From the IMG/VR virus record IMGVR_UViG_3300020195_000009, positions 222,006-286,005 of that record: 64,000 nucleotides of DNA. One strand, 5' to 3'. The position numbers were made by a program, and so were the translations under genes. The notes below the pieces were generated by a model, which was not told where the DNA came from, did no database searches, and saw nothing but the letters and a program-made list of their open reading frames with translations. Each line of letters opens with the position of its first letter. Position 1 is the stretch's first letter. Below, in pieces: positions 21 through 56,015 of this stretch.

Positions 21-1898
21 ATGTTGGCGGCGGGGTGGAAGTACAAGGCCAGTGGGGATACGGCCGTCAAGGAGAGTGCAGGCGTCTCCACCGATGATCG
101 CTGGGCGATCGGTGGAATTACCAATCACGTTCAGGTTGGGGCTCAAGGCGGAACATCTCCGATCATCACGACGGGAGCGAGCGGTGTCATCACCCTCACA
201 GGCATCTCGGGCTTTGTGGCCGCATCGGTAGGTCGCTACATCAGACTCACTGGGTTCGGTGATGCCAACGACGGCCTGTTTCGCATTCTCTCGCAGGGTG
301 GTACAACGCTTACGTACTTCAACCCGAACTGCCCGGGCTCAGCAACGGGGGGTGTAAGCCAGACGTGGTCTGAGCGTCAGGGCGGAACAGCGGCAAGCTC
401 CGGTTTGTCAGGCTCGGCCCCTGCAACACCGGGACGGCAAAACATCACGGGCCTGACTGGGATGGTTCTGGCCACGTCGTTCATGCGTGGTTCGGTAGGA
501 AACCGCCTGACGATCAGTGGTGCAGCGACAGGTGCGAACAACGGTACCTTCATGATCACTCGTGTCTTGTCCGCGACTTCCGTAGAGGTCGACAACGCCG
601 CGGGGGTTGTGGACGCCAACAACGGAGCAATCCTCTGGTCCGAAGTAGACCCCCTTCAACAAGTTTTCCCTGTGGGTACTATCGGAGGCGCAACAGCAGG
701 ACAGTGGATCTGTCTCCAAGGCCCCTCAACGATCAAAGTCCCGATCGGTGCGGGTGTTCCAACCGGCACGTTCCGAAAGGGAGAGAACGTCACGCAGGCG
801 ACGTCCCTAGCTGAAGGTGAAGTCATCGGCGTCCAAGTCGATACCGGAGGAGGTCTCGGCTATCTCGTCATCATGCCCCGCCTGAACGGCATTGGAGCTG
901 GTGTTCGAGGCTGGAGTAACACTGCGGTCATCACCGGCTCTATTTCGGGAGCTACGGCCACGCCAACGGCAACACTGATCGAGTACGTGCGTGAGTGCGT
1001 TTGGACGAAAGGCGTCAACAATACTTCAGGTTACAGTGGCCACTGGTTTCAGCAGTGCGTGGATTCTGTCGGGGAGTCGGCGCAGCGTTTCTCGGTACTA
1101 GCTACGGCAGGGGCGGTCACTGCGTCTCTGATGCCGGGGTTGCCCACGGGAACGTTCCCTACCCTTGGAACCTACGCGGTACTTGGGACGGGCGGGGCCA
1201 ACGCCGCAACGACAGGAGTAAGCAACTTCTATGACGCCAACAATGGCACCGCGAATCTGGGTGTGGTCCAGATGATGTGTGCAAACTGCATTGGCACCTC
1301 CGGGATTTCCGAAGACGGTAGCTGGCTCTTGTGTCCTGGGGTGCCAGTCAACGGTGTCAACGGTTGGTTTGGGTTTCAGTACTGTGAGAATTCCGAAGAT
1401 GGTGATGTAGACCCCTACGTCACGAATCCGCAGAGCAACTCCACTTCATACGGAGGCGTCCGTACGTCTGGCGCTGTGTCTCACGGCCAGTTCAGGGCAG
1501 ATTGGTTCAATCAGTTCGCTTCCGCATCCACGCCTTGGCGTGGATACCGTCGTCGAGGAATGGCGTCAGGGGACGCTTTCCAAGAATTCGGCTGCGCGAT
1601 CCTCGGGAACGCCAGCGCTAACGTGGGTGCGAACAACCCGAACAGCCAAGAGCGAGTGGCGTGTGTTCCAACGCAGCTCACAGTGGTGAAGGATCAACTC
1701 TGGGTGATCTCGACGCAGTCCAGCCAGAAGATGCGCAAGGGAAGTCTGCGTTGGATGGTCTCGATCGCCTTCGTTACGCCTGGCGGTCTCTACGACAACG
1801 GCCGTTTTGTCGGGATCGGCTTGGGTCTGTACGGGACAGCCTTCTCTAGCTACGCGGTTGGTCCGTGGGACGGCGTAACGCCTGGCGGATACTCCTGA
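21..1898 (+). CDS. Gly/Thr-rich putative virion/tail structural protein (probably 5'-truncated by window edge); paralog of next gene
   Basis: 625-aa ORF sharing blocks with 1914..3650 (GWKYKASGD/GWRYKASSD, GPSTIKVPIGAGVPTGTF, MCANCI, EDGDVDPYV, QKMRKG.LRW, GPWD). Confidence 0.6.
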   Translation: MLAAGWKYKASGDTAVKESAGVSTDDRWAIGGITNHVQVGAQGGTSPIITTGASGVITLTGISGFVAASVGRYIRLTGFGDANDGLFRILSQGGTTLTYFNPNCPGSATGGVSQTWSERQGGTAASSGLSGSAPATPGRQNITGLTGMVLATSFMRGSVGNRLTISGAATGANNGTFMITRVLSATSVEVDNAAGVVDANNGAILWSEVDPLQQVFPVGTIGGATAGQWICLQGPSTIKVPIGAGVPTGTFRKGENVTQATSLAEGEVIGVQVDTGGGLGYLVIMPRLNGIGAGVRGWSNTAVITGSISGATATPTATLIEYVRECVWTKGVNNTSGYSGHWFQQCVDSVGESAQRFSVLATAGAVTASLMPGLPTGTFPTLGTYAVLGTGGANAATTGVSNFYDANNGTANLGVVQMMCANCIGTSGISEDGSWLLCPGVPVNGVNGWFGFQYCENSEDGDVDPYVTNPQSNSTSYGGVRTSGAVSHGQFRADWFNQFASASTPWRGYRRRGMASGDAFQEFGCAILGNASANVGANNPNSQERVACVPTQLTVVKDQLWVISTQSSQKMRKGSLRWMVSIAFVTPGGLYDNGRFVGIGLGLYGTAFSSYAVGPWDGVTPGGYS

Positions 1899-1913: not shown

Positions 1914-3650
1914 ATGCCTAACGTAACTATCCCCAACGCGTCCCTCATCTCAGGCTCTTCGGACTTCATCAGCTCGTGGTGGCGCCTCACACGTGGCCTG
2001 AAGGCCTCGGGCTGGCGGTACAAGGCCAGTTCAGACGGTGCAGCGAAGGAGACCACGGGCAACCCCTCCCTCGACAAATGGGGCGGCGGTGTTCAGGTCG
2101 GATCGCAGACGGCGACCGTGTCGTTCGTCATCGGAGCCCCGACGACGACGGCCAAAGGCGGTCGTTCGATCATCACTGGGCTGACGGGTTTCACGGCGAC
2201 GACGCCTACTGGTGGATCACCTGGGCGCTTCCTGGTGATCACTGGAGCGACAAACGCCGCGAACAACGGAACTTGGTTGATCACCAAGTTCATCTCGGCC
2301 ACTTCGGTGGAGATCGAGAACCCCGCGGCGATTGCGGAGACAACACCGGGTACGGCGACATGGACCGAGAAGTCCGCGGTCACGGACACGATGCCTGCCG
2401 CGTTCCAAGGAACGGCGGGGTCGGGAGCTTGGTGGTGTGCTGAAGGCCCTTCGACGATGAAGATCCCCATCGGAGCTGGGGTTCCCACGGGCACCTTCAT
2501 TCGAGGAGAGAACGTCGTTCAGACAACCAGCGGAGCCACTGGCGAGTTGCTCGGTGTCATGACCGATGCTGCGGGGGGCGCCGGGCATCTGGTCATCGCT
2601 CCGCGGGCAAGCGGCACAGGAGCTGCCGTTCGAGGGTGGGGCTCCGCGAACACGATCACAGGCTCAACTTCGGGCGCCACGATTGTGTCGGCAGGAACCC
2701 CTATCGAGTACGTGCGGGAGCTTGTGATCTGGAAAGGCAGTTCCACGGCCACGCACGGCCACATGTACTTCCAGTGCATCGACAGCGTGAACGAAAGTAC
2801 GCCCGCAACTACGGTCGGCCGATTCTCGCAGATGGCTACTCTCGGCGGTTGCACTGCAACGGTGGCTCCTGGTGGTGTGACAGCAGCAGCTCCTAGTGCG
2901 AACGGTTTTCCAGTCGTCGGCACCTATGTCATCTGTGGACAGGGCGGCCCTGCAACGCTTGGTACAAACCAGACCCGGCTCTTCAGTGGCTCTTCAAACA
3001 CGGACGCCTATGGTGTCTGCAACGCGATGTGCGCGAACTGCATCGAGGACGTGGGCGTCTCGCAAGACGGTAGCTACATCTTGTCGATCAGCGTGAGCGC
3101 TAGCTCCGCGTACATCGGATCGGCCTTCCAGCGCTGCGATGATGGAGAAGAGGGTGATGTAGACCCGTATGTCCACTGGCAGCAAGGCGCAGCCAACTAC
3201 GATTCGGCGCCGACGACGACAGCCAGAACGATCCGAAACGTGGAGACAGGATCTACTCCCGATACCTTCCGTTCCGGGTTTATTGCTGCGAACGCCTACA
3301 CGCCATTTCTAGGTTCGCGGCGTAGGGGCTTCCCGACACAAGATGCCTACCAAGTCTTCCAGGGAGGGTTCTTGATCTTCTCTCCGGGTACGGGCACGAT
3401 TGCTCAGAACCTCGGCACTGTAGATCGAGTAGCGACAGCTCCGGTCAACACCGCCGTGCGGGAACCTATTTGGGTTCACTCCGTGCAGTACAACCAGAAA
3501 ATGCGCAAAGGCACTTTGCGCTGGATGTTCTGGATCATGGGCGGTGTCGCCACGGACACCTACGACACCAAGAGTTATGTGCAGATGGCCACGACGATCT
3601 TCGCCACCGTTGCTGGTCCATGGGATCAGTCCACAGTTCCTACGCTCTGA
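1914..3650 (+). CDS. Gly/Thr-rich putative virion/tail structural protein, tandem paralog
   Basis: 578-aa ORF, purine-rich RBS upstream, ATNAANNGTW repeat unit shared with the upstream gene. Confidence 0.65.
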   Translation: MPNVTIPNASLISGSSDFISSWWRLTRGLKASGWRYKASSDGAAKETTGNPSLDKWGGGVQVGSQTATVSFVIGAPTTTAKGGRSIITGLTGFTATTPTGGSPGRFLVITGATNAANNGTWLITKFISATSVEIENPAAIAETTPGTATWTEKSAVTDTMPAAFQGTAGSGAWWCAEGPSTMKIPIGAGVPTGTFIRGENVVQTTSGATGELLGVMTDAAGGAGHLVIAPRASGTGAAVRGWGSANTITGSTSGATIVSAGTPIEYVRELVIWKGSSTATHGHMYFQCIDSVNESTPATTVGRFSQMATLGGCTATVAPGGVTAAAPSANGFPVVGTYVICGQGGPATLGTNQTRLFSGSSNTDAYGVCNAMCANCIEDVGVSQDGSYILSISVSASSAYIGSAFQRCDDGEEGDVDPYVHWQQGAANYDSAPTTTARTIRNVETGSTPDTFRSGFIAANAYTPFLGSRRRGFPTQDAYQVFQGGFLIFSPGTGTIAQNLGTVDRVATAPVNTAVREPIWVHSVQYNQKMRKGTLRWMFWIMGGVATDTYDTKSYVQMATTIFATVAGPWDQSTVPTL

Positions 3651-3657
3651 TTGACCA

Positions 3658-4062
3658 ATGGCTGATCAAGGAGCTTCTCAGGCAAGGAGCAACGAGACGC
3701 TCAATCGCGCCTCCTCGTTTCAGGGGCGAGATGGGGCGGCTGCGGTCAGTCGTTCGGTAACGTCATCCGCGAACTATCTGGGTCAAGATCGACGCTCGGT
3801 GGAGTCAACCGTAGTAGCAGTCGGGTCAACTTTCGATGGTGCGGACCGCGCTGCTGCAAGACGTTCAAGTGCTGGCGTGCCTCGTGGGACAAGAGACGGT
3901 CTTGTTCGGACGTACGTGCTCCGAAGGTTCCTCGGTTGGAATGGAGGCACGCCCGTTCGTTGGGTCAGTGCTACGGACACACCCCCACAACCAGGACTCA
4001 CCAACATCACTATCGAAGACGAGGCTCTGGTGCGCTTTCCGGTAGGGGGACGGGTTCGATGA
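3658..4062 (+). CDS. small structural-module protein, paralog of 5600..5884
   Basis: Identical N-terminus MADQGASQAR and shared LGW.G.TPVRW.S...LTNIT.EDE. Confidence 0.6.
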   Translation: MADQGASQARSNETLNRASSFQGRDGAAAVSRSVTSSANYLGQDRRSVESTVVAVGSTFDGADRAAARRSSAGVPRGTRDGLVRTYVLRRFLGWNGGTPVRWVSATDTPPQPGLTNITIEDEALVRFPVGGRVR

Positions 4063-5591
4063 GGAAAGTCCTTCGCCTCCATGACTCCTTCCGTTTCGTT
4101 GCGCCGGTCATCTTCGGGGCAAGGCCGAGCCCGACCGCGAACAATGGTCTCCGTCCCATCACGGTGCTTGGGAAGAACTTCGTCAACGCGCCGGTCGTTA
4201 CGGTGTCTGGGGTTCCCGCTACGAGTGTGTGGCGTTTGTCAGACTCCTTGCTCACGTGCTTGCCCCCGGCTGGTGCGGTGGGGGTGAAGAATCTGGTTGT
4301 CACGAATCCCGATGGGCAGCACAGCGGCACGAGCGGCAACGGTCTCCTTGAATTTGTTTTGTGGCCGCACATCACCTCGATCACGCCCAATACAGGCACT
4401 GCCGATGGTGGCACAGCGATCACCAATCTCGCTGGGTCAGGGTTCGTTAGTGGTTGCACGGTTACGATCGGTGGTGCGCCTGCGCCCAGCGTCGTTTTCG
4501 TTTCGTCTTCCCAGCTGACGTGCGTGACTCCGTTACGCACGATAGGAGCGAAGGATGTAGTCGTAACGAATCCGGACGGGTCGACGTCAGGTACGGCAGG
4601 GAACGGGTTGTTCACGTACACGTTGCCGTTCGATCCGACGACTCTAGTGTTGTCGTCTTACCAGCGAGACTACACGGATGCCGATGCGAGTAGCCTTACT
4701 TGGCTAGGTACTGCCAGCGCAGGAATCAGTGCTCAGCACAAAGAAGGCCAGCTCTCCGCTATGCCGCTCGCAACGGCTCCGTTGAATGGTTTCAAGGGGG
4801 CTGGATACACGCGAGCGTCAGGAAGGAATACGGCGACAAGGAGAGTGTCTGATAACGGGGCTGTCCTGATGGATCCTACGCTGGTCACAAATACAGCATA
4901 CACCGCCTCATTTTTCCTGGATCTCATGGAGGCGAGAAAAGGGAATGCGACGATCTACCTCAACTCCAGCGTGTTCCAAGCGGATGCGCACTGGGGGTGG
5001 ATGTTCAAGTCCACGGCGTCACTTACGACGCAGGTTGCCATCACGATCACTGCGAGCACGCGGACAATCGATCGCGCGAATGGCAGTTGGATTACAGACG
5101 GCTTTGTAACAGGCCAGACGGTCTACATTCGACGGTCAGTTTTCAACGATGGTTTCGTCTCAACGACACTGCTTAGTGTTTCCGCCCTTACGCTCACTTT
5201 CAACGTTGGAAGTAACCTCGTTGATGAGGTCAGCCTCTTTAGCGATGACATCGCGATCTCCGCGGGTCCTTACGCCTTCATGGTGTTCAATTACACCGGG
5301 TCGTTCCCCTTCGTTGAGGTGGTCACAACTCCAGGACTTCATTGGTACTACGTGCGGCGTACAGCTTCTGGCACCATCCAGATTGATATCGACGGAGTAG
5401 CAGGAACGCCGACTGCTCTTGTAGATCACATCGGTGCCAGCGGCATTGGAGCCCAAACAAACACAAGCTATGGAGGTGCTCAGTGTTCGTTCGTGCTGTA
5501 TGAGCGCTTCACTGCGCTTGTCTCTCAGTCCACGACGGAGCGAACCGACTACAAGCGGTACCTGAACGCCAAGTACGGCACGGCCTACTGA
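4059..5591 (+). CDS. IPT/TIG Ig-like repeat protein, probably virion-associated
   Basis: Two Ig-like units (VVTNPDG twice, ITSITPNTGTADGGTAIT); ATG at 4059 overlaps the upstream stop (ATGA). Confidence 0.7.
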   Translation: MRKVLRLHDSFRFVAPVIFGARPSPTANNGLRPITVLGKNFVNAPVVTVSGVPATSVWRLSDSLLTCLPPAGAVGVKNLVVTNPDGQHSGTSGNGLLEFVLWPHITSITPNTGTADGGTAITNLAGSGFVSGCTVTIGGAPAPSVVFVSSSQLTCVTPLRTIGAKDVVVTNPDGSTSGTAGNGLFTYTLPFDPTTLVLSSYQRDYTDADASSLTWLGTASAGISAQHKEGQLSAMPLATAPLNGFKGAGYTRASGRNTATRRVSDNGAVLMDPTLVTNTAYTASFFLDLMEARKGNATIYLNSSVFQADAHWGWMFKSTASLTTQVAITITASTRTIDRANGSWITDGFVTGQTVYIRRSVFNDGFVSTTLLSVSALTLTFNVGSNLVDEVSLFSDDIAISAGPYAFMVFNYTGSFPFVEVVTTPGLHWYYVRRTASGTIQIDIDGVAGTPTALVDHIGASGIGAQTNTSYGGAQCSFVLYERFTALVSQSTTERTDYKRYLNAKYGTAY

Positions 5592-11982: not shown

Positions 11983-12023
11983 GAGAGGGTTGATTCTGAG
12001 ACCCCCTCCCGTGTTCCCTCAAC
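11983..12023 (+). promoter_or_regulatory. class I promoter / 33-bp repeat copy 2, leaderless
   Basis: GGTTGATTC-N14-GTGTT-N8-ATG(12024). Confidence 0.8.
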
Positions 12024-16722: not shown

Positions 16723-17649
16723 ATGATCATCCCAGCTCCATTAGTCGGGGAGGGTGTTGGGGATGCTCTTGGTATGGCCTTCGAGACTAAGAAGGCCGAC
16801 CACGAGGAGCTACTCCAGTGGGACGGGGAAACGTACCATGGTAGCGAGTACCATGGGTTGAGCCCCGGCCAGTGGACCGATGACACGATGATGGCGAAGC
16901 TCATCGCCGAGAGCCTCGTCACGTGCGGTGGTTACTACCCCCGTGATGTAGCGGACCGCTACCGAACCTGGTACCGAAGCGATGACCACCGAGGGATGGG
17001 GAAGACAACCAAAGCGGCCCTCCTGAACCTAGACAACGGGATCCCTTGGGACCGGAGCGGCATCAATGGAGCTGAGGGGAACGGGACCGCCATGCGGATC
17101 GCCCCACTCGGGTTCTTCTTCCATGAAGACCTGGTGACCACCCGCCAGTTTGCGCAGATCGATGCTCGCATCACCCACTGCTCGAAGGAAGCCGAGATGG
17201 GCTCCATCGCTGTAGGGTTGGCTGTCGCCTTGCTCGTTGAAGGGGTTACCTTCGAGATCCTCACGGAACGGGTCCTTGAAAACCTAGAAGACTGCCAGGT
17301 GAAGCAAGGCCTTAAAAAGGTCTCTTTCTATCAGAGGCAGCCAGACTTCCCCGTACGAGATGCCTTGAGGGTGATCGGAACCCACGCTCACGTTACCCAG
17401 ACGGTACCCGCAGCCTTTGCCGCTTTCGTCCTAACCAAGTCCTTTGAGGAGGCGGTTCAAGCCGCGATTCGGGCTGGCGGAGACACTGACACGACGGCCG
17501 CCATTACGGGGGCGCTTGCGGGAACCCACTACGGGTTGGATGCTATCCCCATCGCTTGGCGGAAGGGTTTGGAGGACTTCGACCACCTCCACCGGCTTGA
17601 GTTGAAGATCGCTGGCGGCCCGAGAAGCAGCGCCATCTGGCTCCGCTAA
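16723..17649 (+). CDS. ADP-ribosylglycohydrolase (DraG/ARH family)
   Basis: GDALG, WTDDT, GNGTAMR, ITH, GGDTDT motifs. Confidence 0.9.
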   Translation: MIIPAPLVGEGVGDALGMAFETKKADHEELLQWDGETYHGSEYHGLSPGQWTDDTMMAKLIAESLVTCGGYYPRDVADRYRTWYRSDDHRGMGKTTKAALLNLDNGIPWDRSGINGAEGNGTAMRIAPLGFFFHEDLVTTRQFAQIDARITHCSKEAEMGSIAVGLAVALLVEGVTFEILTERVLENLEDCQVKQGLKKVSFYQRQPDFPVRDALRVIGTHAHVTQTVPAAFAAFVLTKSFEEAVQAAIRAGGDTDTTAAITGALAGTHYGLDAIPIAWRKGLEDFDHLHRLELKIAGGPRSSAIWLR

Positions 17650-17880
17650 GATACGCTCGAACCTGGTCTTGTAGGGCTCGGGTGGGGGTGGCACAAAGTA
17701 GACGTAACCTCGACGGGGGCCGCCATTCGGCTCTCGTGCGACAGCTCCAGTGTTGTTGAAGGCGCACAAGGTCGAAGCGACCGATGAGGTCTTGGCTTGA
17801 AGAGCGTGTGATATTTCCGTAGCGCTCTTGCCAGGGTTCCCCCGGACGTAGTTCAAGATCCTGTCTTTGAGCATCTCCAT
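17431..17880 (-). CDS. winged-helix protein carrying KTRFERI; tail runs antisense into the ARH gene
   Basis: ILNYVRGNPGKSATEIS..GYVYF wHTH-like pattern; ATG abuts the tRNA 3' end. Confidence 0.55.
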   Translation of the reverse strand: MEMLKDRILNYVRGNPGKSATEISHALQAKTSSVASTLCAFNNTGAVAREPNGGPRRGYVYFVPPPPEPYKTRFERILAEPDGAASRAASDLQLKPVEVVEVLQTLPPSDGDSIQPVVGSRKRPRNGGRRVSVSASPNRGLNRLLKGLG

Positions 17881-17957
17881 GGTGGTCCCGACGGGATTTG
17901 AACCCGCACCCCGCGAATTTAGAATTCGCTGCTTCAAACCATTTGAGCTTCAGGACC
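17880..17957 (-). tRNA. amber suppressor tRNA (anticodon CUA)
   Basis: Acceptor GGTCCTG/CGGGACC, anticodon arm GCGAA-TT[CTA]AA-TTCGC, T arm GCGGG-TTCAAAT-CCCGT, ends ACCA; atypical A8 and D arm. Confidence 0.8.
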
Positions 17958-18047
17958 GTGCTGCCTAGGGCTGCCTAGGGTCTACACCGCGAAATGTCAC
18001 GGGTGGTGACTAAGGGTTTCCCTTATGGGGTGGTGTACACCAACCCG

Positions 18048-19070
18048 ATGCGTATTGAGATCCCTACCCCCGATGACCTCCACGTCCATCTTAGACAAGA
18101 CTGGATGCTGGAGCACACGGTCGAACAATCCGCCCTCCACTTCGGCCGGGCTCTCGTAATGCCCAACCTCACCCCACCTGTCAAGACGGGGGCGGATGTC
18201 GAGAAGTACCGTTCGGACATCCTCGCTTGGAGACGATTCAGCAAGAAGCCGTTCGAGCCTCTCATGACGATCAAGCTCATGCCGGACACAACGCCGGAAA
18301 TCATCAAAGAGGCCTTTACTGCTGGGGCAGTCGCGGGCAAATTGTATCCCGAAGGCGTCACCACAAACTCTGAGGACGGGATCTCGTTCCAAGGCATCTA
18401 CGAGATGAACGCAGTCTTCAAGGCGATGGAAGACGTAGGAATGGTACTGAGCCTTCACGGCGAGAAGCCCGGTGCCTTTTGCATGGATCGAGAGGAAGCG
18501 TTCCTCAACACTCTCGGGACTATCGCTCATGCTTTCCCAAAGCTCCGCATCGTTATGGAGCACATCACGCACCAGAATACGGTGAAGACAGTGAAGGCGC
18601 TTCCCACCAACGTAGCGGCAACCATCACGGTTCACCATCTGGTCCTCAGCCTCGATGATGTCATCGGAGGCTCGCTTCAACCCCACAATTTCTGCAAGCC
18701 GATCGCAAAAAGCCCCGAGGACCGAGAAGTCCTTCGTGATGCAGCTATCAGTGGCAACCCCAAGTTCTTCTTGGGGACGGACTCGGCACCCCACCTCAAA
18801 GAGAAGAAAGAGTCCGCCTCCGGGTGTTCGGGGGTCTACACGGCACCGATAGCGATGCCCATCCTTGCTCACATCTTCGAGGAAATGGAAGCTCTCGACA
18901 AACTAGCCAACTTCACCTCGAAGTTCGGTGCTGACTTCTACGGGCTGCCCGCTCCGAAAGGGACTCTCGTTCTTGAAAAGGGCGAGCCCTGGGAGATTCC
19001 AAAGAGCTACCACGATGTTGTACCCCTTTGGGCGGGACGTTCAATCGAGTGGAGAGCCGAGCGTCTGTAA
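18048..19070 (+). CDS. pyrC: dihydroorotase (E. coli-type)
   Basis: PDDLHVHLR, VMPNL.PP, KLYPEG.TTNS, LHGE, EHIT, FCKPIAK, FLGTDSAPH. Confidence 0.92.
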   Translation: MRIEIPTPDDLHVHLRQDWMLEHTVEQSALHFGRALVMPNLTPPVKTGADVEKYRSDILAWRRFSKKPFEPLMTIKLMPDTTPEIIKEAFTAGAVAGKLYPEGVTTNSEDGISFQGIYEMNAVFKAMEDVGMVLSLHGEKPGAFCMDREEAFLNTLGTIAHAFPKLRIVMEHITHQNTVKTVKALPTNVAATITVHHLVLSLDDVIGGSLQPHNFCKPIAKSPEDREVLRDAAISGNPKFFLGTDSAPHLKEKKESASGCSGVYTAPIAMPILAHIFEEMEALDKLANFTSKFGADFYGLPAPKGTLVLEKGEPWEIPKSYHDVVPLWAGRSIEWRAERL

Positions 19071-19103
19071 ACAGATTCTCCACAGCCTGTGGATAGAACG
19101 GGG

Positions 19104-19176
19104 CGCTCCCGGCAGGACTTGAACCTGCGACGTACGGATTTAGAAACCGATGTTCTGCCGACTGAACTACGGGAGC
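19104..19176 (-). tRNA. amber suppressor tRNA (anticodon CUA)
   Basis: GCTCCCG/CGGGAGC acceptor, GTTC/GAAC D stem, loop TT[CTA]AA at canonical spacing (anticodon stem has two T-T mismatches), T arm GCAGG-TTCAAGT-CCTGC, G73, no encoded CCA. Confidence 0.8.
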
Positions 19177-19182
19177 ACACAT

Positions 19183-21952: not shown

Positions 21953-22459
21953 ATGATTACCTACCTCAAAGGCGATGCGACCTGCCCTCAAGCGAAGGGG
22001 ACCAAGCTGATTATACACATTTCAAACACGTTGGGCGGTTGGGGCAAAGGCTTCGTTCTAGCGATTTCCAAGCGTTGGAAGGCTCCTGAGGCTATGTACC
22101 GCCAGTGGTACCACCAACGAGATCCGATTCAAAACACCGAGCCCGGTGCGATCGTAATGACTTCCGGGCGTTTCGCTCTCGGGGAGACCCAGCTCGTAAT
22201 GGTCCAGTCAGGCTTGGCGGTCGTCAACATGATCGCCCAAGAGGGCATGCGAACTGGAAGCAAAGGACCGCCCATCCGGTACGAAGCTCTCAAGACGTGC
22301 CTTGGACTGGTCAACGGATATGCTAATTCTTTCAAGGCTTCCATCCATGCACCCAGAATTGGATGTGGACTTGCGGGCGGAAGCTGGGACAAGGTGGAAC
22401 CCATCATCCAGGAAACCCTTTCAGAGCGGGACGTGTACGTTTACGACTTTTCCGGTTGA
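21953..22459 (+). CDS. macro domain (Appr-1-p processing) protein
   Basis: GDAT, GGWGKGFVLAISKRW, VVNMIAQ, HAPRIGCGLAGGSW. Confidence 0.85.
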   Translation: MITYLKGDATCPQAKGTKLIIHISNTLGGWGKGFVLAISKRWKAPEAMYRQWYHQRDPIQNTEPGAIVMTSGRFALGETQLVMVQSGLAVVNMIAQEGMRTGSKGPPIRYEALKTCLGLVNGYANSFKASIHAPRIGCGLAGGSWDKVEPIIQETLSERDVYVYDFSG

Positions 22460-22488
22460 TTCCCCAACCCCTCAAGTGTTCCTCAAAC
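22454..22488 (+). promoter_or_regulatory. class I promoter, leaderless; its TGA is the macro gene stop
   Basis: GGTTGATTC-N13-GTGTT-N8-ATG(22489). Confidence 0.8.
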
Positions 22489-30342: not shown

Positions 30343-30491
30343 GTCAGAAGTTTACACCTGATGGGGTGCGATTCCAGCCAACTTAGGGCGTTAAATCGCG
30401 AAACCCCGCAAGTCTTTCGACTAGCAGGGTTCGTTACCACGATCCAACAGCCTTTTTAGGGCATGTCCTCGCCCGGTTACCCGGATGTGGC

Positions 30492-30920
30492 CGAGGTCCG
30501 CCTCAGATTTCTCTGAAACAGATAAACAGTGCCTTGTTTCAACTGCCTGATGGTTTGACCCACCTGCTTAGCCGATCCAACCAACCTGGAGTTACCCCCA
30601 GACTGAAGACACCCACGAGACCTTTCGATCCCCCGACCTCCCCGGTTCTTCTCCTCTTGCGAAGAGTCCCTCGGAGACCACCGCCAACCTCCCTTGCGGG
30701 AGGCCAACCGTGTTGGAATGAGATTTACTCATTCCCAGGTTCCAAACAGCCTTTCGACCATCTGAAGGGAGCCGGACTTCTTGCGTCCTCCGACCCTACC
30801 TTGAATTCCTTGCGGTCTCCAAGGGCCTGTCTGCCTGACTTGCGCCAGCACTGCTTGTTTCAACACGAAGAGTTGCCTCCCCGTGTTCAGAACGAGGCGG
30901 ACAGTACAGGCAGACCTCGC
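30492..30920 (-). ncRNA. large unannotated structured RNA (~430 nt)
   Basis: 12-bp closing helix, at least seven GNRA-capped hairpins with G-U pairs on the minus strand, GTGTT-N8 element at the predicted 5' end. Confidence 0.75.
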
Positions 30921-31047
30921 TGTAAGCAAACACTTTTTTCTACCTACTTGTCGATTCCCTACAGCTCATATAAAGTAGGTGGTCTGAACCACAAGCCTCT
31001 AAAACACCAAGGTGGGATAAGGAAATCCAACAACGGTTGACGATTCC

Positions 31048-31096: not shown

Positions 31097-33059
31097 ATGA
31101 CCTACGACGAGATGGCTGTGGAGATTCTGATGGGCCCTGGCTTGGTCAAGACCAAGCAGTCGAAGCTCTCGAAGCTTGCCAAGCAGGCGGCGGCTCGTCT
31201 GGAAAACCGTGTCGAGTGTCCCGAATGTGGACACGAGGGCCCGCACGAGGACAACGGGTGTTCGGGTTCGCAGAAGTCTTACCTCTGCTCCGGCTGCGGT
31301 TGCTGCTTCGATGCGGTGGCGTCGTGAAGGGGTTGGCGAATTTCAGCCGAACGCAGGAGGCCCTCAAAACCTACGACACCGACAAGTCTCGTCGGGACGC
31401 CGTTTGGGGCGCAACCGACACGAACGAGGCTGTCTATGCAGCCCAGGCCGAAGACAAGAAGGCGGCTGACAAGGTTCGTGAGGCTTTCGCCGAGGACACC
31501 AAGAACATCAACAGCCGCGAACAAGCCTTCCTCGTCAACCCAGACGATCCCTGGCTTCGCGGGCTGGTCACCAAGTACGGAGACGAATCATGAGTATTGT
31601 GTACTTTCAAACCGATCACGACGATCGCTGTCACGAGCTAAACGGGGAAACCCCGGCTCGTCTCAAAGACAAGACCCTCATGGGTCTTCTTCAAGACATG
31701 CCTGCCACCGGGGACACCCTGGAGGTTTACCTCGGGACCGACTGGGTGTCCGGTTGGATCCGTGGGGAACCCAACACCTACAAGTTCGAGATCGAATGCG
31801 TGTCGTTCGAGGACGAACGAACCGTCCACGGCGCCATCCACGATGGGCTCATCAAGTACTACAGTGCTCGAAGCAGCCCCCTTCCGTGGCACAAGATCAT
31901 CCCGCCTTCCAAGCAGTGCAACAACCTCCCGGACGAGGTCTACGTGGTCATCGCCAGGGAGGACCGCCAGCCGGACGGCTCCCAGGGTCGGTACACGCTC
32001 GCAACCCGAGCCTTCTTCAAGACTGAAGAGAAAGCCAAAGACTACGCCGTGGGGATCAGCTCCTCTCGGGAACCCCTGGTCATTCCAGGCCGTTTCAATC
32101 AAATGCGAAAGTCTGGTTGATTCCAACAACCCCTCAAGTGTTCTTCTACTATGAACGCCGACCTCATCTTCGTCCTCGCTGTTTCCTTCACGAACGGCAC
32201 GGTCCTGACCGCCAACAACGTTACCGCTGGTAACGGAATGGTGATCGACTGGCGCAACGTGAAGTCCGGTGAGACTGTCGTGTCTGAGGGTGATGCCTAC
32301 GACATGGCTGTCACCTTCGTTGGGCTCGTCGGGTGGGGTGCGGCGGCCATGGCTCTCGATGAGAAGGAGGCCGCATGAACCGCACCGAAGCCTACCAGAA
32401 GGACCGTAAGGGGGACTTCTACGTTGACGACTGCGAGGTCACCGGAGGCCATGGCGTCTTCGGGTCGGAGACCGGCTTCTGTTACGGGTCGTTCTCCGAC
32501 GCCTCCGACGCCTATAGGCTCTGCAACGACCTCATGGACGGAAAGGCCAGGATTCAGTGAGCCACGGGGAGGTCCGCCACCACGGCTTGAAGGAAGAACC
32601 GGACGGCTCCGCTCAGACCATCACCGAGACTTGGTGCAACCATTGCCGGAAGTGGATCCCTACCAATGGGGTTCTCGGCCCTCTCACTTTCATGGCGAAG
32701 CACCGAGACGGAGACTGTCAGCAGTCATGAGCCTTACCGAGCAAGAGATCCAAGACAGCATCCTCCGGTCCCAACGGGACGTCGCCCTTCTCCTCAAAGA
32801 AGCCAAAGCCAAGCTCACTTACGTGGAGAAGCTCGTCTCTGAGGGTCAGTGTGTTCTTCTTCGGTCCGATATTCCGATCGCTGAGCTAACGGCCATCCTT
32901 TGCAAATTTGACGCGATCGAAACCTGTCGGGAGGTCCTCCGCAAAGTCAAATCGGAGCGAAGCCGCAGGCAAGCTAAAGCCAGGGAGGGTGGTCGATGTA
33001 GGTTCAACCGCATCTCTCGGGGCAAAGTCCTGAAGGAAGAAAATTCAAAGTCTGGTTGA
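31097..33059 (+). other. small hypothetical genes (31097-31327 zinc ribbon, 31324-31593, 31590-32120, 32151-32378, 32375-32560, 32727-33059)
   Basis: Coupled ORFs downstream of class I promoters. Confidence 0.55.
32115..32150 (+). promoter_or_regulatory. class I promoter, leaderless; supplies upstream stop
   Basis: GGTTGATTC-N14-GTGTT-N8-ATG(32151). Confidence 0.8.
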
Positions 33060-33088
33060 TTCCAACCCAACCCAAGTGTTCTTCCAAC
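33054..33088 (+). promoter_or_regulatory. class I promoter, leaderless; supplies upstream stop
   Basis: GGTTGATTC-N13-GTGTT-N8-ATG(33089). Confidence 0.8.
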
Positions 33089-35210: not shown

Positions 35211-35245
35211 GGTTGATTCCCAACCCCCTCCCGTGTTCTTCCAAC
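35211..35245 (+). promoter_or_regulatory. class I promoter, leaderless; supplies upstream stop
   Basis: GGTTGATTC-N13-GTGTT-N8-ATG(35246). Confidence 0.8.
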
Positions 35246-49694: not shown

Positions 49695-49730
49695 GGTTGA
49701 ATCCTGACGGACCCACCGTGTTCTTCCAAC
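49695..49730 (+). promoter_or_regulatory. class I promoter, leaderless
   Basis: GGTTGAATC-N14-GTGTT-N8-ATG(49731). Confidence 0.8.
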
Positions 49731-52102: not shown

Positions 52103-54096
52103 TCTCTAAGAGCGAGCCCCATGAACGAGTTGGACGAACTACCGAGTCTCCGAATCCTTGCGGTGCAGGTCAAGAAGCATTTTGAGGGGGTGAAGGTGGC
52201 CCGTTCGCTCCCCGACCGCTCCAGCTCGTCCTGGAGAACCTCCCCGTAGACTTCGAGAGCCCTCCGAGCGGCTAGGTCCTTGGCTCTTTTGAGTTTGGCT
52301 TCTGTCACCGAGGACACCTGTTCCAATGGTGGGCTTTGCAGCGCTTGCACCAGGGAGACGGTGGACGTGTCGCCTGGGTTGGGTAGTAGTCCGCGTCGGA
52401 TCATCTCCCACTCAAAAATGTGATACCGAGCTGAGCCCTTTCCGCCCTTCGCAGCGGCCTTCTCGTACGAATCCAAAATCTGCGAATCCGAAGCATGGGC
52501 CGCCCATGTCTTCAGATTCGTTTGACGCGTCGTCACGTGAACGTGCTCCAGCTCTCCAGCGTCTCGTCCCATCTCCAGCCAAGCTTCCCCAGCTCCCCCT
52601 TGTGTGCCTCAGAGAGGTCTTCCGGTCGAGGACCTGTCGCATGAAGTACGTCATGCTGAGCATCGCAGTTCCACGTCACCCCGTCAGGCTTGTACCCGTT
52701 CAAGATAGTGAGCCCTTGGGCTATGTCGTGCTGACTTGCCATCTTGCGCCCCATAGCCAAAAATGAGAGGTTTCCAACCAAACCCACCCCCTCGCTGACA
52801 CCGAGAGTCTAAAGTGACTCACCAAATGAGATCGGAGAGCCAAAAATGAGGGGTTTCCGAGAGCCCTACCTCTTCTTACTCTTTTTCTTCAAAGAGATAC
52901 CGCCCTCTAAGACCCCAGAGCCAAAAATGAGAGGTTTCCGAGCAGGTTCGGCCTCCGCTCGCCTACGACGGACCTCACGGATGAGAGCCAGGACCAGACG
53001 GCCGTTGAGTCGGAGCCCTTCCTTGGACTCTCGAAGACAAGAGATCGGCTTCTTCTAGGTCCCGTGGGTGAGCATCTCCAGTTCTCACGTGGTAAGTCTT
53101 CGGTACCTTCTCAAGGAAGCTTTCTCCTACCTCACCAGGTGAGAGCTTCCTGGCTTCATTCATCACCCCGGCCACAAGAGGCTGCCATGAACGGCCCTCG
53201 CGAAGGACAAGAAGCCCACCCGACGGGCTCATGAGCGTCACTCTGTACTCTTTTGATCCGAAGGGATGGGTCAGCTCCAAGATTCGACCCACCTCGTCTT
53301 CCCAGACTCTCCGGTCAAACGTGTGCCACGACGGAGCGGCGTAGCCGCTCGTCGAGTGAGCGTCTCGGACCCCAGGATACGTCAAGCGCCAAGGCATGGT
53401 CCCTAGTATTCCCCAGGGTTTCGTCCCGACCAATCCAAGTCCATCGTCTGGTCCGCCAAGACCTCGTACCCGAGCCCGGCCCACGAGTGAAGCGTCTCGT
53501 CCCGCAGCCGAAGTTGCTCAGGTCCAGACCCAAACATAACGATGAGCGGCCAGTCTTTCGTAGGAAGACGCCGGACCTTATCGAAGCGGTCCAGACCCGG
53601 AGGGTCTTCTTGCCCTTCCCGAAGCTGTACATGAATCGTCGGGAAGCCCATGCCAGGGAGTACACCGGGGATTACCCCCTTCCCCTCAAAAATGAGCCGG
53701 GCTATGAAATTTAGGTCCGGGCAGGGACAGGGGGTTTAGCTCCTGGGCTCCAAAAATTGACCGGCACCCAAAATTTAAGGTCGGGGCGCTCGGAATCCTC
53801 TCATTTCTTAGGGGTTACCCGTCAAACGGGAGCCTCGCGGGGGTAAGGCTAGGCGCAAGAGCCCTCGTCAGGGGCGTTTGGTCGGAATCCTCTCATTTCT
53901 AGGGCTCGTCAGGTCATTCGTCGGGTGTTACGTCCTATTACCCCTCGGCCGGACCACATGTCCGTGTTAATTCGATACGCCCTTTTTGCCGATTTCCCAT
54001 AGTCAAGGGGAATAATCGAGCGGTTTTTATTTTTACAGGAAATATGTATGCCACCTGACACCCCCTGGTCCTGAGGGGTTTTTGAGGAATCGTGCC

Positions 54097-54132: not shown

Positions 54133-54969
54133 ATGGACCGTGACCTCTCAGGTGCATCGAATGACGCAGAACTCATGCAGCTCTGGTTACAAGGGAGACC
54201 TGAGAGCACCATGAGAGTGTACGAGCCTGTAGCTCAGGCCTTCATGGCCGCTCTCCCCCAAGGCTTGCGAGGGGCAACCGTCAAGGACGTGCTCACCTAC
54301 ATTCAAACACACGTGAAGGGTGAGCCTGCTACCAGGGCTAGGTTGGTGAGCACCATCAAGAGCCTGCTCTCATGGGCCTGGAGGACGGGCTATACAACCG
54401 TCAACGTAGGTAAGGCTATTAGGTGCGTACGGGTGCCCAGTACCCTACACAAGAAGCTGTTAGATGAAGGTCAGATACAAGGGCTATGCCGGGCCGCAAG
54501 CGGCCGTGACCATGCCCTTGTTGTTCTTCTGTACGTGAGCGGTCTTCGTATCAGCGAGGCCTGTGGCCTTCTCGGGTCCGACTTGAGGGGATGTCATGTG
54601 ACGGTCCTTGGTAAGGGCACCAAGACCCGAACCGTCCTGATCCCCCAGGCAGTAGCCGACCTTCTCATGACCCTTACCAAGGGGCACCAGGTTGACCCGA
54701 GTAAGCCGCTCTTCTGTTCCCGGTGGGGGAGGCGCCCCCTGGGCGTCCGGGCCGCTAGGGAGGCTATCTACAAGGCGGCATCAAAGGTCGGCCTGGACGA
54801 CCTGTCGCCTCACTGGCTCCGGCACGCTCATGCGACCCATGCCATGGACCGGGGGGCTCCCCTCCACGTCGTCCAACAGGGCCTTGGTCACGCCTCCGTG
54901 GCAACCACCTCGAAGTACCTCCACGTGAAGCCGAGCGTAGGCGCTTCGCAGTGGCTCGCTCCGGTGTAG
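54133..54969 (+). CDS. XerC/D-like tyrosine recombinase
   Basis: SGLRISE, GKGTKTR, PHWLRH, LGHASVATTSKYLH. Confidence 0.92.
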   Translation: MDRDLSGASNDAELMQLWLQGRPESTMRVYEPVAQAFMAALPQGLRGATVKDVLTYIQTHVKGEPATRARLVSTIKSLLSWAWRTGYTTVNVGKAIRCVRVPSTLHKKLLDEGQIQGLCRAASGRDHALVVLLYVSGLRISEACGLLGSDLRGCHVTVLGKGTKTRTVLIPQAVADLLMTLTKGHQVDPSKPLFCSRWGRRPLGVRAAREAIYKAASKVGLDDLSPHWLRHAHATHAMDRGAPLHVVQQGLGHASVATTSKYLHVKPSVGASQWLAPV

Positions 54970-55280: not shown

Positions 55281-55434
55281 CAGAAATGAGAGAAATTCGA
55301 GCGTAGCGAGCCTGCCCCAAAGGGTGCCCTTCCTGTAGGGCGCGAAGCTCGAAAACCTCTCATTTCCAGGGCCTTTCCCACGTGGTAGCTAGGCAACCGA
55401 AAACGTGACTTTTCGGATCTAGTGCCCAAAAAGG

Positions 55435-55550: not shown

Positions 55551-56015
55551 CTCAAGGCGTGGTCCGTTCCGCAAGGCCTTCCTGGCCATCAAGATCGCTG
55601 ACGCCTACGACGCTGCCATGGTTGCCCTCGGGGACGACCGACGAGCCTGGCGGGGCTCCAACTGAGAGCCAGAAATGAGAGGTTTCCGTTGAACCGTGGG
55701 TCTCTTTTGAGGTACCCCAAATTATCTTCTCTCTTCGGAAAGAAATCAGTTGAAACAAGAGGCCGGCGAAGACAAAGCTGTCTGCCTCTACGCCCGTGTG
55801 GAACATGACCTACGAGACCCTCGACGCCCTCCTTGACGAAGGGACCAAGAGCGCCAACGTCATCTCCATCTTCCGCAACGTAAAGAAGGCGGCCTGAGCG
55901 CCAAGGCCCAGGTGAGGCTGGCGAAGCTCCGAGAAGGCTGGGCCTCTTGAGAGACAGAAGAGCCGGGCCTCCTCACGGGGGGTCCGGCTCTTCTGTCTCA
56001 ACGCAGGCTCGGAGC

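What the first reader, a model, noticed from the sequence alone, without database searches (positions are those of the whole stretch)
30492..30920. Unannotated ~430-nt ornate ncRNA
Seen (minus strand): CGAGGTCTGCCT pairs with AGGCGGACCTCG to close the RNA. Hairpins include AACACGGGGAG-GCAA-CTCTTCGTGTT, CAGATGGTC-GAAA-GGCTGTTTG, CCTCCC-GCAA-GGGAGG, CTCTTC-GCAA-GAGGAG, GGGATC-GAAA-GGTCTC, CTGGGG-GTAA-CTCCAG and TCAGA-GAAA-TCTGA. Long-range helices are CCTTGGAGACC/GGTCTCCGAGG and CAGTGC/GCACTG, and each strand of the latter is preceded by the same GTTGAAACAAG. An alternative 5' pairing partner (GTCCGCCTC) hints at a switch. I see no RNase P, tmRNA or group II hallmarks. Inference: a new large phage RNA class, comparable in kind to ROOL/GOLLD.
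Basis: partly seen in the sequence, partly recalled or inferred. Interest (0 to 1): 0.85.

Follow-up and report, generated by a model that had tools for sequence, protein, structure and literature searches.

The report
New large ornate phage RNA gene
A jumbo phage carries a free-standing, promoter-driven gene for a roughly 530-base, highly folded RNA that matches no known RNA family, is kept in related phages by compensating mutations, and so looks like a new class of large structured phage RNA whose function is still unknown.

Summary
On the minus strand, window 30920 to about 30389 (about 530 nt, roughly 100 nt longer at the 3' end) encodes a non-coding RNA.

- **Fold strength:** it folds far better than shuffles (z = -8.3) and far better than its antisense.
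- **GNRA hairpins:** it has 9 with at least 5 contiguous pairs. No other 527-nt stretch of the window has more than 2.
- **Homologues:** I found five distinct full-length variants plus one fragment, at 71-98% identity, all in environmental phage contigs.
- **Covariation:** over 154 modelled pairs, 97.6% of cells are canonical and 32 pairs carry two-sided compensatory changes.
- **Not coding:** 23% of pairs are G-U, indels are 1-2 nt, and no reading frame is conserved.
- **No known family:** Rfam 15 gives no match at E <= 10 inside the RNA.
- **Independent cassette:** it has its own conserved phage-type promoter. It sits in different gene contexts and is absent from close relatives.

The second long-range helix, the full 12-bp closing helix and the repeated 11-mer are not conserved.

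It is best read as a new trans-acting ornate RNA class. Its function is unknown.

The parts
30928..30954 (-). Promoter-like box TCGACA-N15-GTGTTT. It has the same architecture as the phage's recurrent gene-upstream motif TTGAWTC-N13/14-GTGTTC-7 nt-ATG.
   Evidence: The box is conserved in all five variants while the DNA further upstream is only 68-70% identical. The motif family was found.
30920..30920 (-). Predicted 5' end of the RNA, 7 nt after the GTGTTT element. This is the same spacing at which ATG follows GTGTTC at about 17 genes.
   Evidence: Inference. There is no transcript data.
30887..30919 (-). 5' segment of unresolved pairing. It contains CGAGGU, which may pair with ACCUCG at 30497-30492, and GUCCGCCUC.
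   Evidence: Competing pairings were scored. L017's own minimum-energy fold closes with CGAGGU/ACCUCG. There is no compensatory change either way.
30863..30886 (-). Hairpin A, with an invariant GCAA loop.
   Evidence: 3 pairs with two-sided change, plus loss of one whole base pair in L008.
30849..30856 (-). 5' strand of long-range helix LR1 (AAGCAGUG). LR1 encloses the multi-hairpin core.
   Evidence: Pairs with 30531-30524. 100% canonical, 2 compensatory pairs. It also forms in L017's own fold.
30835..30848 (-). Hairpin B (CUGGC-GNRA-GUCAG).
   Evidence: The loop stays GNRA (GCAA, GCGA or GUGA). 1 compensatory pair.
30799..30824 (-). Hairpin C, a local hairpin with a GCAA loop.
   Evidence: 3 compensatory pairs. 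In L014 and L017 it is a near-copy of hairpin D.
30769..30796 (-). Hairpin D, module CGGA-GGAC-GNRA-GAAG-UCCG. It is almost invariant.
   Evidence: 8 of 9 pairs are invariant, and the loop is GCAA or GAAA.
30741..30766 (-). Hairpin E, 11 bp with an invariant GAAA loop.
   Evidence: 2 compensatory and 4 one-sided changes, 100% canonical.
30715..30735 (-). Hairpin F, with a variable non-GNRA loop.
   Evidence: 3 compensatory pairs.
30679..30712 (-). Hairpin G, with a GCAA or GCGA loop.
   Evidence: 3 compensatory pairs, 90% canonical.
30639..30677 (-). Helix H (UCUCCG/CCGGGGA) enclosing hairpin I (CUCUUC-GCAA-GAGGAG).
   Evidence: One-sided changes only, 96-97% canonical.
30613..30636 (-). Hairpin J, with a GAAA or GUAA loop. 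An invariant stretch GUGGGUGUCUU (about 30616-30606) overlaps its 3' strand and runs into the following junction.
   Evidence: 3 compensatory pairs.
30582..30605 (-). Hairpin K, 10 bp, with a variable loop (GUAA, UUCG or other).
   Evidence: 4 compensatory and 6 one-sided changes, 100% canonical.
30549..30564 (-). Hairpin L, with an invariant 6-nt loop GUCAAA. It is preceded by the conserved junction GCUAAGC.
   Evidence: 2 compensatory pairs, seen in L014, L017 and L013.
30524..30531 (-). 3' strand of long-range helix LR1 (CACUGUUU).
30498..30521 (-). Hairpin M, 10 bp with an invariant GAAA loop.
   Evidence: 4 compensatory pairs, including in L009 and L013.
30450..30496 (-). 3' domain, first part: CCUCG/CGAGG around UCCGG-GNRA-CCGGG, then GCC-CUARAAA-GGC. 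It is almost invariant.
   Evidence: Invariant in six sequences, so the structure is not testable by covariation. It was used as the search pattern that found the homologues.
30389..30449 (-). Terminal long hairpin P (three stacked helices, GAAA or GCAA loop). It probably marks the 3' end. No U-tract follows it.
   Evidence: 2 compensatory pairs at the top and 7 one-sided changes. Conservation stops at GAUUUAAC. In L016 a convergent gene abuts it.

Best explanation
**Shown.** Window 30920 to about 30389 (minus strand) is a gene for a non-coding RNA of about 530 nt, carried on a roughly 570-bp promoter-plus-RNA cassette in a 286-kb jumbo phage.
- The RNA folds into a core of about eleven hairpins closed by a long-range helix (AAGCAGUG/CACUGUUU).
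- After the core come one more hairpin and a nearly invariant 3' domain that ends in a long rod-like hairpin.
- Eleven hairpin loops stay GNRA in every variant even when their letters change.

**Inferred.** It is transcribed on its own from a phage-type promoter and acts in trans, not as a leader of the next gene. The conserved GNRA loops dock into helices or receptors to lock a compact three-dimensional particle, possibly joining several copies as in ROOL and GOLLD. That particle, not any coded peptide, is the functional product. Because close relatives lack it, its role is accessory (a fitness or host-interaction factor) rather than essential. The biochemical activity is not known.
For: **Structure beyond chance and strand-specific**
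- z = -7.9 and -8.3, against -3.0 for the antisense.
- 9 GNRA hairpins, against at most 2 anywhere else in the window.
- 36 of 154 pairs are G-U, and these would be C.A mismatches on the other strand.

**Homologues.** L008 = L038, L009, L014 = L016, L017 and the fragment L013 come from JGI, Logan and ENA assemblies.

**Covariation**
- 97.6% of cells are canonical and 32 pairs have two-sided change. Column shuffles average 12.6 such pairs (maximum 20). Slid registers give 33-52% canonical cells.
- In the 71%-identical L017, 56 of 68 changed pairs stay paired. In L008, all 10 changed pairs stay paired.

**Loops and coding**
- The loops remain GNRA through changes such as GCAA to GCGA, GUGA or GAAA, and GAAA to GUAA or GCAA.
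- No reading frame is conserved, and indels are 1-2 nt.

**Independent gene**
- The RNA has its own conserved promoter box with the phage's standard architecture.
- The next gene, ORF205, has its own promoter-like motif.
- The downstream neighbour differs between variants: ORF205 in the window, a 97-aa ORF in L009, DUF4031 in L017, and a convergent gene in L016.
- The cassette is the only similarity between the window locus and L016.

**Conservation and distribution**
- The RNA is 93% identical to L009. Over the same comparison ORF205 is 75%, ORF145 is 88% and the upstream spacer is 68%.
- It is absent from relatives L010-12 and L033-37.

**Known precedent.** ROOL and GOLLD are large phage or prophage RNAs, non-essential, with no known protein partner. 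They form RNA-only multimeric cages held by A-minor contacts and kissing loops (PMC12286853).
Against: - There is no transcript, end-mapping or structure-probing data, so the ends and the promoter are inferred.
- Only five distinct full-length sequences exist, and most compensatory changes come from one of them (L017, 25 of about 36). Statistical power is therefore limited and phylogeny is not controlled.
- The closing of the 5' end and the folding of the nearly invariant 3' domain are unresolved.
- No tetraloop receptor, pseudoknot or intermolecular contact has been demonstrated. GNRA loops could equally serve protein binding.
- High nucleotide identity could partly reflect recent horizontal transfer of the cassette rather than selection alone.
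Confidence: 0.6

Rival explanations
1. It is the RNA part of a ribonucleoprotein, or a decoy: the folded RNA binds and sequesters or scaffolds a host or phage protein, for example a defence or RNA-metabolism factor. On this reading the GNRA loops and invariant junctions are protein-recognition sites.
For: - The RNA is accessory: it is present or absent among close relatives, which is typical of phage host-interaction cargo.
- It has long invariant single-stranded stretches, such as GUGGGUGUCUU, GCUAAGC, the loop GUCAAA and CAUGCCCUARAAAGGCUGU.
- Related phages carry RNA-repair-type genes (RlaP, Ro60/TROVE) near the same locus.
Against: - No protein gene co-occurs with the RNA in all contexts.
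- No Ro60 gene was found among the window genes scanned.
- No Y-RNA or other Rfam match was found.
Confidence: 0.2
2. It is a large ribozyme. It would either process itself or act on other RNAs, for example the phage's tRNA or mRNA transcripts.
For: - Its size and its density of GNRA loops and junctions resemble group I and II introns and RNase P RNA.
- It has nearly invariant junction nucleotides.
- The phage encodes its own tRNAs.
- The string GGAGGA..AAGUCCGGCUCC resembles the RNase P CR-I box (plus my own recollection of the E. coli sequence).
Against: - No match to RNase P, group I, group II or any self-cleaving ribozyme model at E <= 10.
- The putative P4 partner UCGGCU is not conserved: it is UCAGCU, GCACU or GGGCU in homologues.
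- The CR-I-like string is a local hairpin that is duplicated in L014 and L017.
- There are no flanking exons.
Confidence: 0.12
3. It is a cis-acting leader (a riboswitch or attenuator) that controls the downstream genes ORF205 and ORF145.
For: - In the window, L008, L009 and L013 it lies upstream of, and on the same strand as, ORF205.
- Alternative pairings of the CGAGG/CCUCG segments exist on paper.
Against: - In L016 the next gene is convergent. In L017 it is a DUF4031 gene, and in L009 another ORF is inserted.
- ORF205 carries its own promoter-like motif after the RNA.
- Relatives keep the ORF205 or ORF145 homologues without the RNA.
- At about 530 nt with 15 hairpins, it is far beyond known leaders.
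Confidence: 0.04
4. It is not an RNA gene at all. It would be a DNA-level element (an origin, packaging site or recombination site), a small protein gene, or a CRISPR-repeat mimic, since hairpin A is followed by GUUGAAAC.
For: - It lies in a divergent intergenic region.
- Spurious ORFs of 66-168 aa overlap it, and one was called as a gene in L008 and L038.
- GUUGAAAC resembles the 3' end of some CRISPR repeats, as in L007.
Against: - Pairing is strand-specific, with 23% G-U pairs.
- The antisense has no GNRA hairpins.
- No frame is conserved, and the indels shift the frame.
- The GUUGAAAC strings are not conserved.
- There is no repeat array or cas gene nearby.
Confidence: 0.03

Closest known systems
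ROOL RNA (Rfam RF03087) and GOLLD RNA (RF01998)
   Same: - Large (over 500 nt), many-hairpin 'ornate' RNAs encoded by phages or prophages.
- No known protein partner.
- Dispensable or sporadic in distribution.
- Free-standing genes.
- Tertiary and quaternary structure built from A-minor-type contacts and loop interactions (PMC12286853).
   Different: - There is no sequence or structure match to either covariance model.
- The host range differs: a 58% G+C environmental jumbo phage rather than Lactobacillales or rumen phages.
- It is not next to a tRNA island here. The tRNAs lie 11-13 kb away.
- Multimer formation is untested.
OLE, raiA and HEARO RNAs (other large bacterial structured RNAs)
   Same: Large, covariation-supported, multi-junction RNAs with conserved GNRA-type loops.
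   Different: - No model match.
- OLE works with the membrane proteins OapA/B, and HEARO is the guide RNA of IscB. No such genes are adjacent here.
RNase P RNA and group I/II introns
   Same: The size class is comparable, the loops are GNRA-rich, a long-range helix closes the core, and there is a CR-I-like string GGAGGA..AAGUCCGGCUCC.
   Different: - No model match.
- The P4-like pairing is not conserved.
- The CR-I-like string is a duplicated local hairpin.
- There are no exons or splice-site context.
Phage 'morons' (independent promoter-gene-terminator cassettes inserted between phage genes)
   Same: - It is a self-contained unit of about 570 bp with its own promoter and a terminal hairpin.
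- It is present in some relatives and absent in others, and it is found in different gene neighbourhoods.
   Different: The cargo is a large structured RNA rather than a protein gene.

Membership tests
ROOL (RF03087) / GOLLD (RF01998) | Match to the family covariance model (sequence plus secondary structure). | tested here: not met
   cmscan against all 4227 Rfam 15 models gave no hit to either family at E <= 10. This covered the window RNA and L009, L013, L014 and L017.
ROOL / GOLLD | RNA-only homo-oligomeric cage. | not testable with these tools
   This needs native gels, SEC-MALS or cryo-EM of the transcript.
Large ornate phage ncRNA (descriptive kind) | Phage-encoded, over 400 nt, non-coding, many conserved helices supported by covariation, and free-standing. 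| tested here: met
   - The source contig is an IMG/VR viral contig of 286 kb.
- The RNA is about 530 nt.
- 154 pairs are 97.6% canonical, and 32 have two-sided changes.
- No frame is conserved.
- It has its own promoter and variable neighbours.
RNase P RNA (RF00010, RF00011, RF00373) | Conserved P4 helix between the CR-I and CR-V boxes, and a model match. | tested here: not met
   There is no model hit. The candidate P4 3' strand varies without compensation: UCGGCU, UCAGCU, GCACU or GGGCU, against an invariant AGUCCGG.
Group I / group II intron | Interrupts a gene (flanking exons) and has the catalytic core (P3-P9, or domain V with the AGC triad). | tested here: not met
   - It is intergenic, lying between a promoter and the next promoter.
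- There is no RF00028, RF00029 or related hit.
- The terminal hairpin has domain-V-like size but reads AAC, not AGC, and has a 1x1 loop rather than a 2-nt bulge.
tmRNA / tRNA-like | A tRNA-like domain plus a tag reading frame. | tested here: not met
   ARAGORN finds only the two tRNA(CUA) genes elsewhere in the window. There is no Rfam tmRNA hit.
Riboswitch / cis-regulatory leader | Constant position in the 5' UTR of a regulated gene family. | tested here: not met
   The downstream gene differs or is convergent in L009, L016 and L017. ORF205 has its own promoter-like motif.
CRISPR repeat / RNA anti-CRISPR mimic | A conserved repeat-like hairpin plus handle that matches a host CRISPR repeat. 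| tested here: inconclusive
   The GUUGAAAC strings are not conserved among homologues. The host and its CRISPR repeats are unknown.

The most novel reading that the evidence does not exclude
A previously undescribed class of self-folding RNA, possibly a self-assembling RNA-only particle or a new ribozyme. It travels between environmental jumbo phages as a compact promoter-plus-RNA cassette. These phages also carry amber-suppressor tRNAs. It may act on translation or RNA metabolism, or as a decoy against host defence.
Probability: 0.3. Interest if true: 0.9.

Novelty: new variant of a known kind. Interest (0 to 1): 0.72.

Why it matters
Only a handful of large, intricately folded RNAs without known function are known (OLE, GOLLD, ROOL, raiA, HEARO). 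Each one that has been studied has revealed unexpected biology or architecture, such as RNA-only nanocages and RNA guides for nucleases.

This RNA is a new, unrelated example:
- It has an unusually clean design: about 15 hairpins, 11 conserved GNRA loops and one closing long-range helix.
- It has a defined promoter.
- It is clearly modular and horizontally shuffled.
- It is small enough (about 530 nt) for direct in vitro transcription and cryo-EM.
- Because it is present or absent among otherwise similar phages, its function could be approached by comparison once a host is known.

It also shows that rare RNA classes escape all-against-all screens of viral databases. Only one copy is present in IMG/VR.

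Tried and rejected
1. **Pattern scan with the two 11-mers in viral contigs.** It returned only the source contig and false positives: tandem repeats in genes and a CRISPR-like array. The 11-mer is not a family signature.
2. **Similarity searches.** Distant BLAST of the region and megablast of 12 kb against 50,697 GenBank phages found nothing.
3. **Three further conserved-motif scans of IMG/VR.** They returned only the source contig.
4. **Scan of 185,579 species genomes.** It gave 15 hits, and all are chance by nhmmer.
5. **Searching the protein database with the spurious ORF inside the RNA.** It found only L008.
6. **Flanking-protein routes.** These gave L008, L009, L013 and L038 with the RNA. 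They also gave several relatives without it (L010-12, L033-37).
7. **RNase P idea.** Rejected; see the membership test.
8. **Group II domain-V idea for the terminal hairpin.** Rejected, because the triad and bulge are missing.
9. **RNAalifold's local helix GUCUGCCUG/CAGGCAGAC.** Rejected, because three pairs break in L017.
10. **Local alternative AGGCAGU/ACUGUUU to the long-range helix.** Disfavoured by two mismatches in L013.
11. **TAG read-through as an explanation for the gap.** There is no conserved frame with or without it, and no gain in coding density in the window.
12. **Tool limits.** I did not pass a typed 554-character structure to the count of structure pairs, and I built no covariance model because the alignment exceeds 400 columns. 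The same measures were computed in scripts.

Full report
**What is there.** The region lies between two divergently oriented gene sets. A + strand gene starts at ATG 31097. On the minus strand, ORF205 (30342-29725), ORF145 (29716-29279) and a DUF4031 gene (29292-29023) follow. The window is part of IMGVR_UViG_3300020195_000009, a 286-kb viral contig.

**More than chance.**
Its antisense folds at -137.5 (z = -3.0).
- The full 527-nt span gives -250.1 kcal/mol (z = -8.3).
- The RNA strand has 9 GNRA hairpins with at least 5 contiguous pairs. The mean is 0.15 and the maximum 2 in all other 527-nt windows of both strands, shuffles average 0.23, and the antisense has 0.

**Not a known family.** Rfam 15 (4227 models) gives only two tRNAs in the whole window at gathering thresholds. 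At E <= 10 it gives nothing inside the RNA, either in the window or in homologues L009, L013, L014 and L017. The one exception is a 19-nt chance hit in L014. GenBank phages hold nothing similar. The published IMG/VR screen for structured RNAs clusters homologous intergenic regions within IMG/VR (PMC10690425). My four motif scans find only the source contig there, so that screen could not have detected this RNA.

**Homologues.**
- Through the neighbouring protein ORF205 I reached L008 (Logan), L009 (Logan) and L013 (ENA, which holds the 3' 180 nt only).
- Through a 21-base conserved motif I reached L014, L016 and L017 in JGI metagenomes.
- Through ORF145 I reached L038, whose RNA is identical to that of L008.
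- Identities to the window RNA are 97.7, 93, 83.5, 71 and 82%.
- L014 and L016 give identical scores, coordinates and aligned rows, so I treat them as one variant.
- The 15 hits in species genomes are chance matches.

**Extent.** The conserved block begins at a promoter-like box (30954-30928) and ends at GAUUUAAC (about 30389). Outside it, identity drops sharply. That extra 3' domain is the most conserved part.

**Promoter.** The phage has a recurrent motif, TTGAWTC-N13/14-GTGTTC, followed after 7 nt by ATG. About 17 genes show it, and there are 36 relaxed matches against 6 in shuffles. The RNA is preceded by TCGACA-N15-GTGTTT, followed after 7 nt by G30920. The core of this box is conserved in all variants. 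By analogy the transcript starts at 30920. After the RNA, ORF205 has its own copy of the motif.

**Structure.** I combined RNAalifold with an exhaustive search for compatible stacks. This gave 154 pairs in 20 helices, with coordinates.
- Across six sequences, 97.6% of cells are canonical.
- 32 pairs have two-sided changes and 41 have one-sided changes. Column shuffles average 12.6 two-sided pairs (maximum 20).
- Sliding the partner by 1-3 columns gives 33-52% canonical cells and 1-9 two-sided pairs.
- Compensatory changes occur in L008 (1), L009 (2), L014 (4), L013 (4) and L017 (25).
- In L017, 56 of 68 altered pairs remain paired. In L008, all 10 do.
- L008 also deletes exactly one base pair of hairpin A.
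- The long-range helix AAGCAGUG/CACUGUUU is fully canonical with two compensatory pairs. It also forms in the independent minimum-energy fold of L017.
- Eleven loops stay GNRA through substitutions. Loop L (GUCAAA) is invariant.

- The helix CCUUGGAGACC/GGUCUCCGAGG competes with local hairpin C, which has three compensatory pairs, and it loses pairs in L014 and L017.
- The inner half of the 12-bp closing helix belongs to the extended hairpin M, which has four compensatory pairs. The outer CGAGGU/ACCUCG is possible but unproven.
- The GTTGAAACAAG repeat is not conserved.
- The proposed switch remains an untested possibility. CGAGG occurs twice and CCUCG twice.

**Not coding, and RNA-level.**
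- 36 of 154 pairs in the window are G-U.
- The longest open frames differ in strand and frame between variants, and indels are 1-2 nt.
- The ORF called inside the RNA in L008 and L038 has no relatives.

**An independent, shuffled cassette.**
- The downstream neighbour is ORF205 in the window, L008 and L013. It is an extra 97-aa ORF in L009, DUF4031 in L017, and a convergent 92-aa gene in L016.
- Between the window locus and L016, the only similarity is window 30956-30387.
- Relatives L035-37 have the 77-aa gene directly next to ORF145, with neither the RNA nor ORF205. L010-12, L033 and L034 have other genes there and no RNA.
- Against L009 the RNA is 93% identical, ORF205 75%, ORF145 88% and the upstream spacer 68%.

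**Interpretation.** The data show a real, independently organised, structured RNA gene of a new family.
- The mechanism is inferred: a trans-acting, self-folding particle held by GNRA-mediated tertiary contacts. It is possibly multimeric like ROOL and GOLLD, which are phage-borne, dispensable, have no known protein partner, and are held by A-minor and loop contacts (PMC12286853).
- Protein decoy or scaffold and ribozyme readings remain open.
- A cis-regulatory leader, a DNA element, a coding gene and a CRISPR mimic are unlikely.

**Limits.** There are only five full-length variants, and one sequence dominates the covariation. There is no expression data, and the host is unknown. The 5' closure and the fold of the 3' domain are unresolved.

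Noticed in passing
window 17880-17957 (-) and 19101-19177 (-): Two tRNA genes with anticodon CUA, which are amber suppressors. A crude test showed no gain in coding density when TAG is read through inside this window, and TAG ends 24 of 95 crude gene calls. Stop-codon recoding is therefore not shown here and may concern other parts of the 286-kb genome.
   Followed up: partly
window, about 20 sites, e.g. 11990-12016, 22456-22481, 33056-33081, 35213-35238, 49697-49723 (+); 10440-10414 (-): A recurrent gene-upstream motif, TTGAWTC-N13/14-GTGTTC, followed after exactly 7 nt by ATG, with no Shine-Dalgarno sequence. It looks like a phage promoter class that gives leaderless or near-leaderless mRNAs.
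   Followed up: partly
window 52738-52944 and 55650-55692 (direct); 53778-53912 and 55337-55379 (inverted): A repeat of about 20 nt, AGCCAAAAATGAGAGGTTTCC, occurs in several copies around a tyrosine recombinase gene (54133-54969). The copies may be regulatory or recombinase-binding sites.
   Followed up: no
window 21-1898 and 1914-3650 (+): Two adjacent large paralogous genes of 625 and 578 aa with no family match. Several in-register DNA repeats lie 1725-1752 bp apart.
   Followed up: no
window 16723-17649 (+), 17994-19070 (+): An ADP-ribosylglycohydrolase gene and an amidohydrolase gene are interleaved with the suppressor tRNA genes.
   Followed up: no
L034:1-1096 and 3282-4439; L010:2410-3576: Related phages that lack the RNA carry RNA-repair-type genes a few kb from the syntenic locus. 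L034 has a Ro60/TROVE-vWA protein, and RlaP is also present.
   Followed up: no
L007:9770-10320 (IMGVR_UViG_2765235960_000001): A CRISPR-like array of repeats GCAGCCGCCTTCGGGCGGCTGTGTGTTGAAAC in an unrelated viral contig. It was picked up as a false positive of the first pattern scan.
   Followed up: no
window 30799-30824 versus 30769-30796; L014 and L017 equivalents: Hairpins C and D are tandem copies of one module, CGGA-GGAC-GNRA-GAAG-UCCG. The copies are nearly identical in L014 and L017 and have diverged in the window lineage. The purine-rich 3x3 internal loop may be a recurrent tertiary motif.
   Followed up: partly
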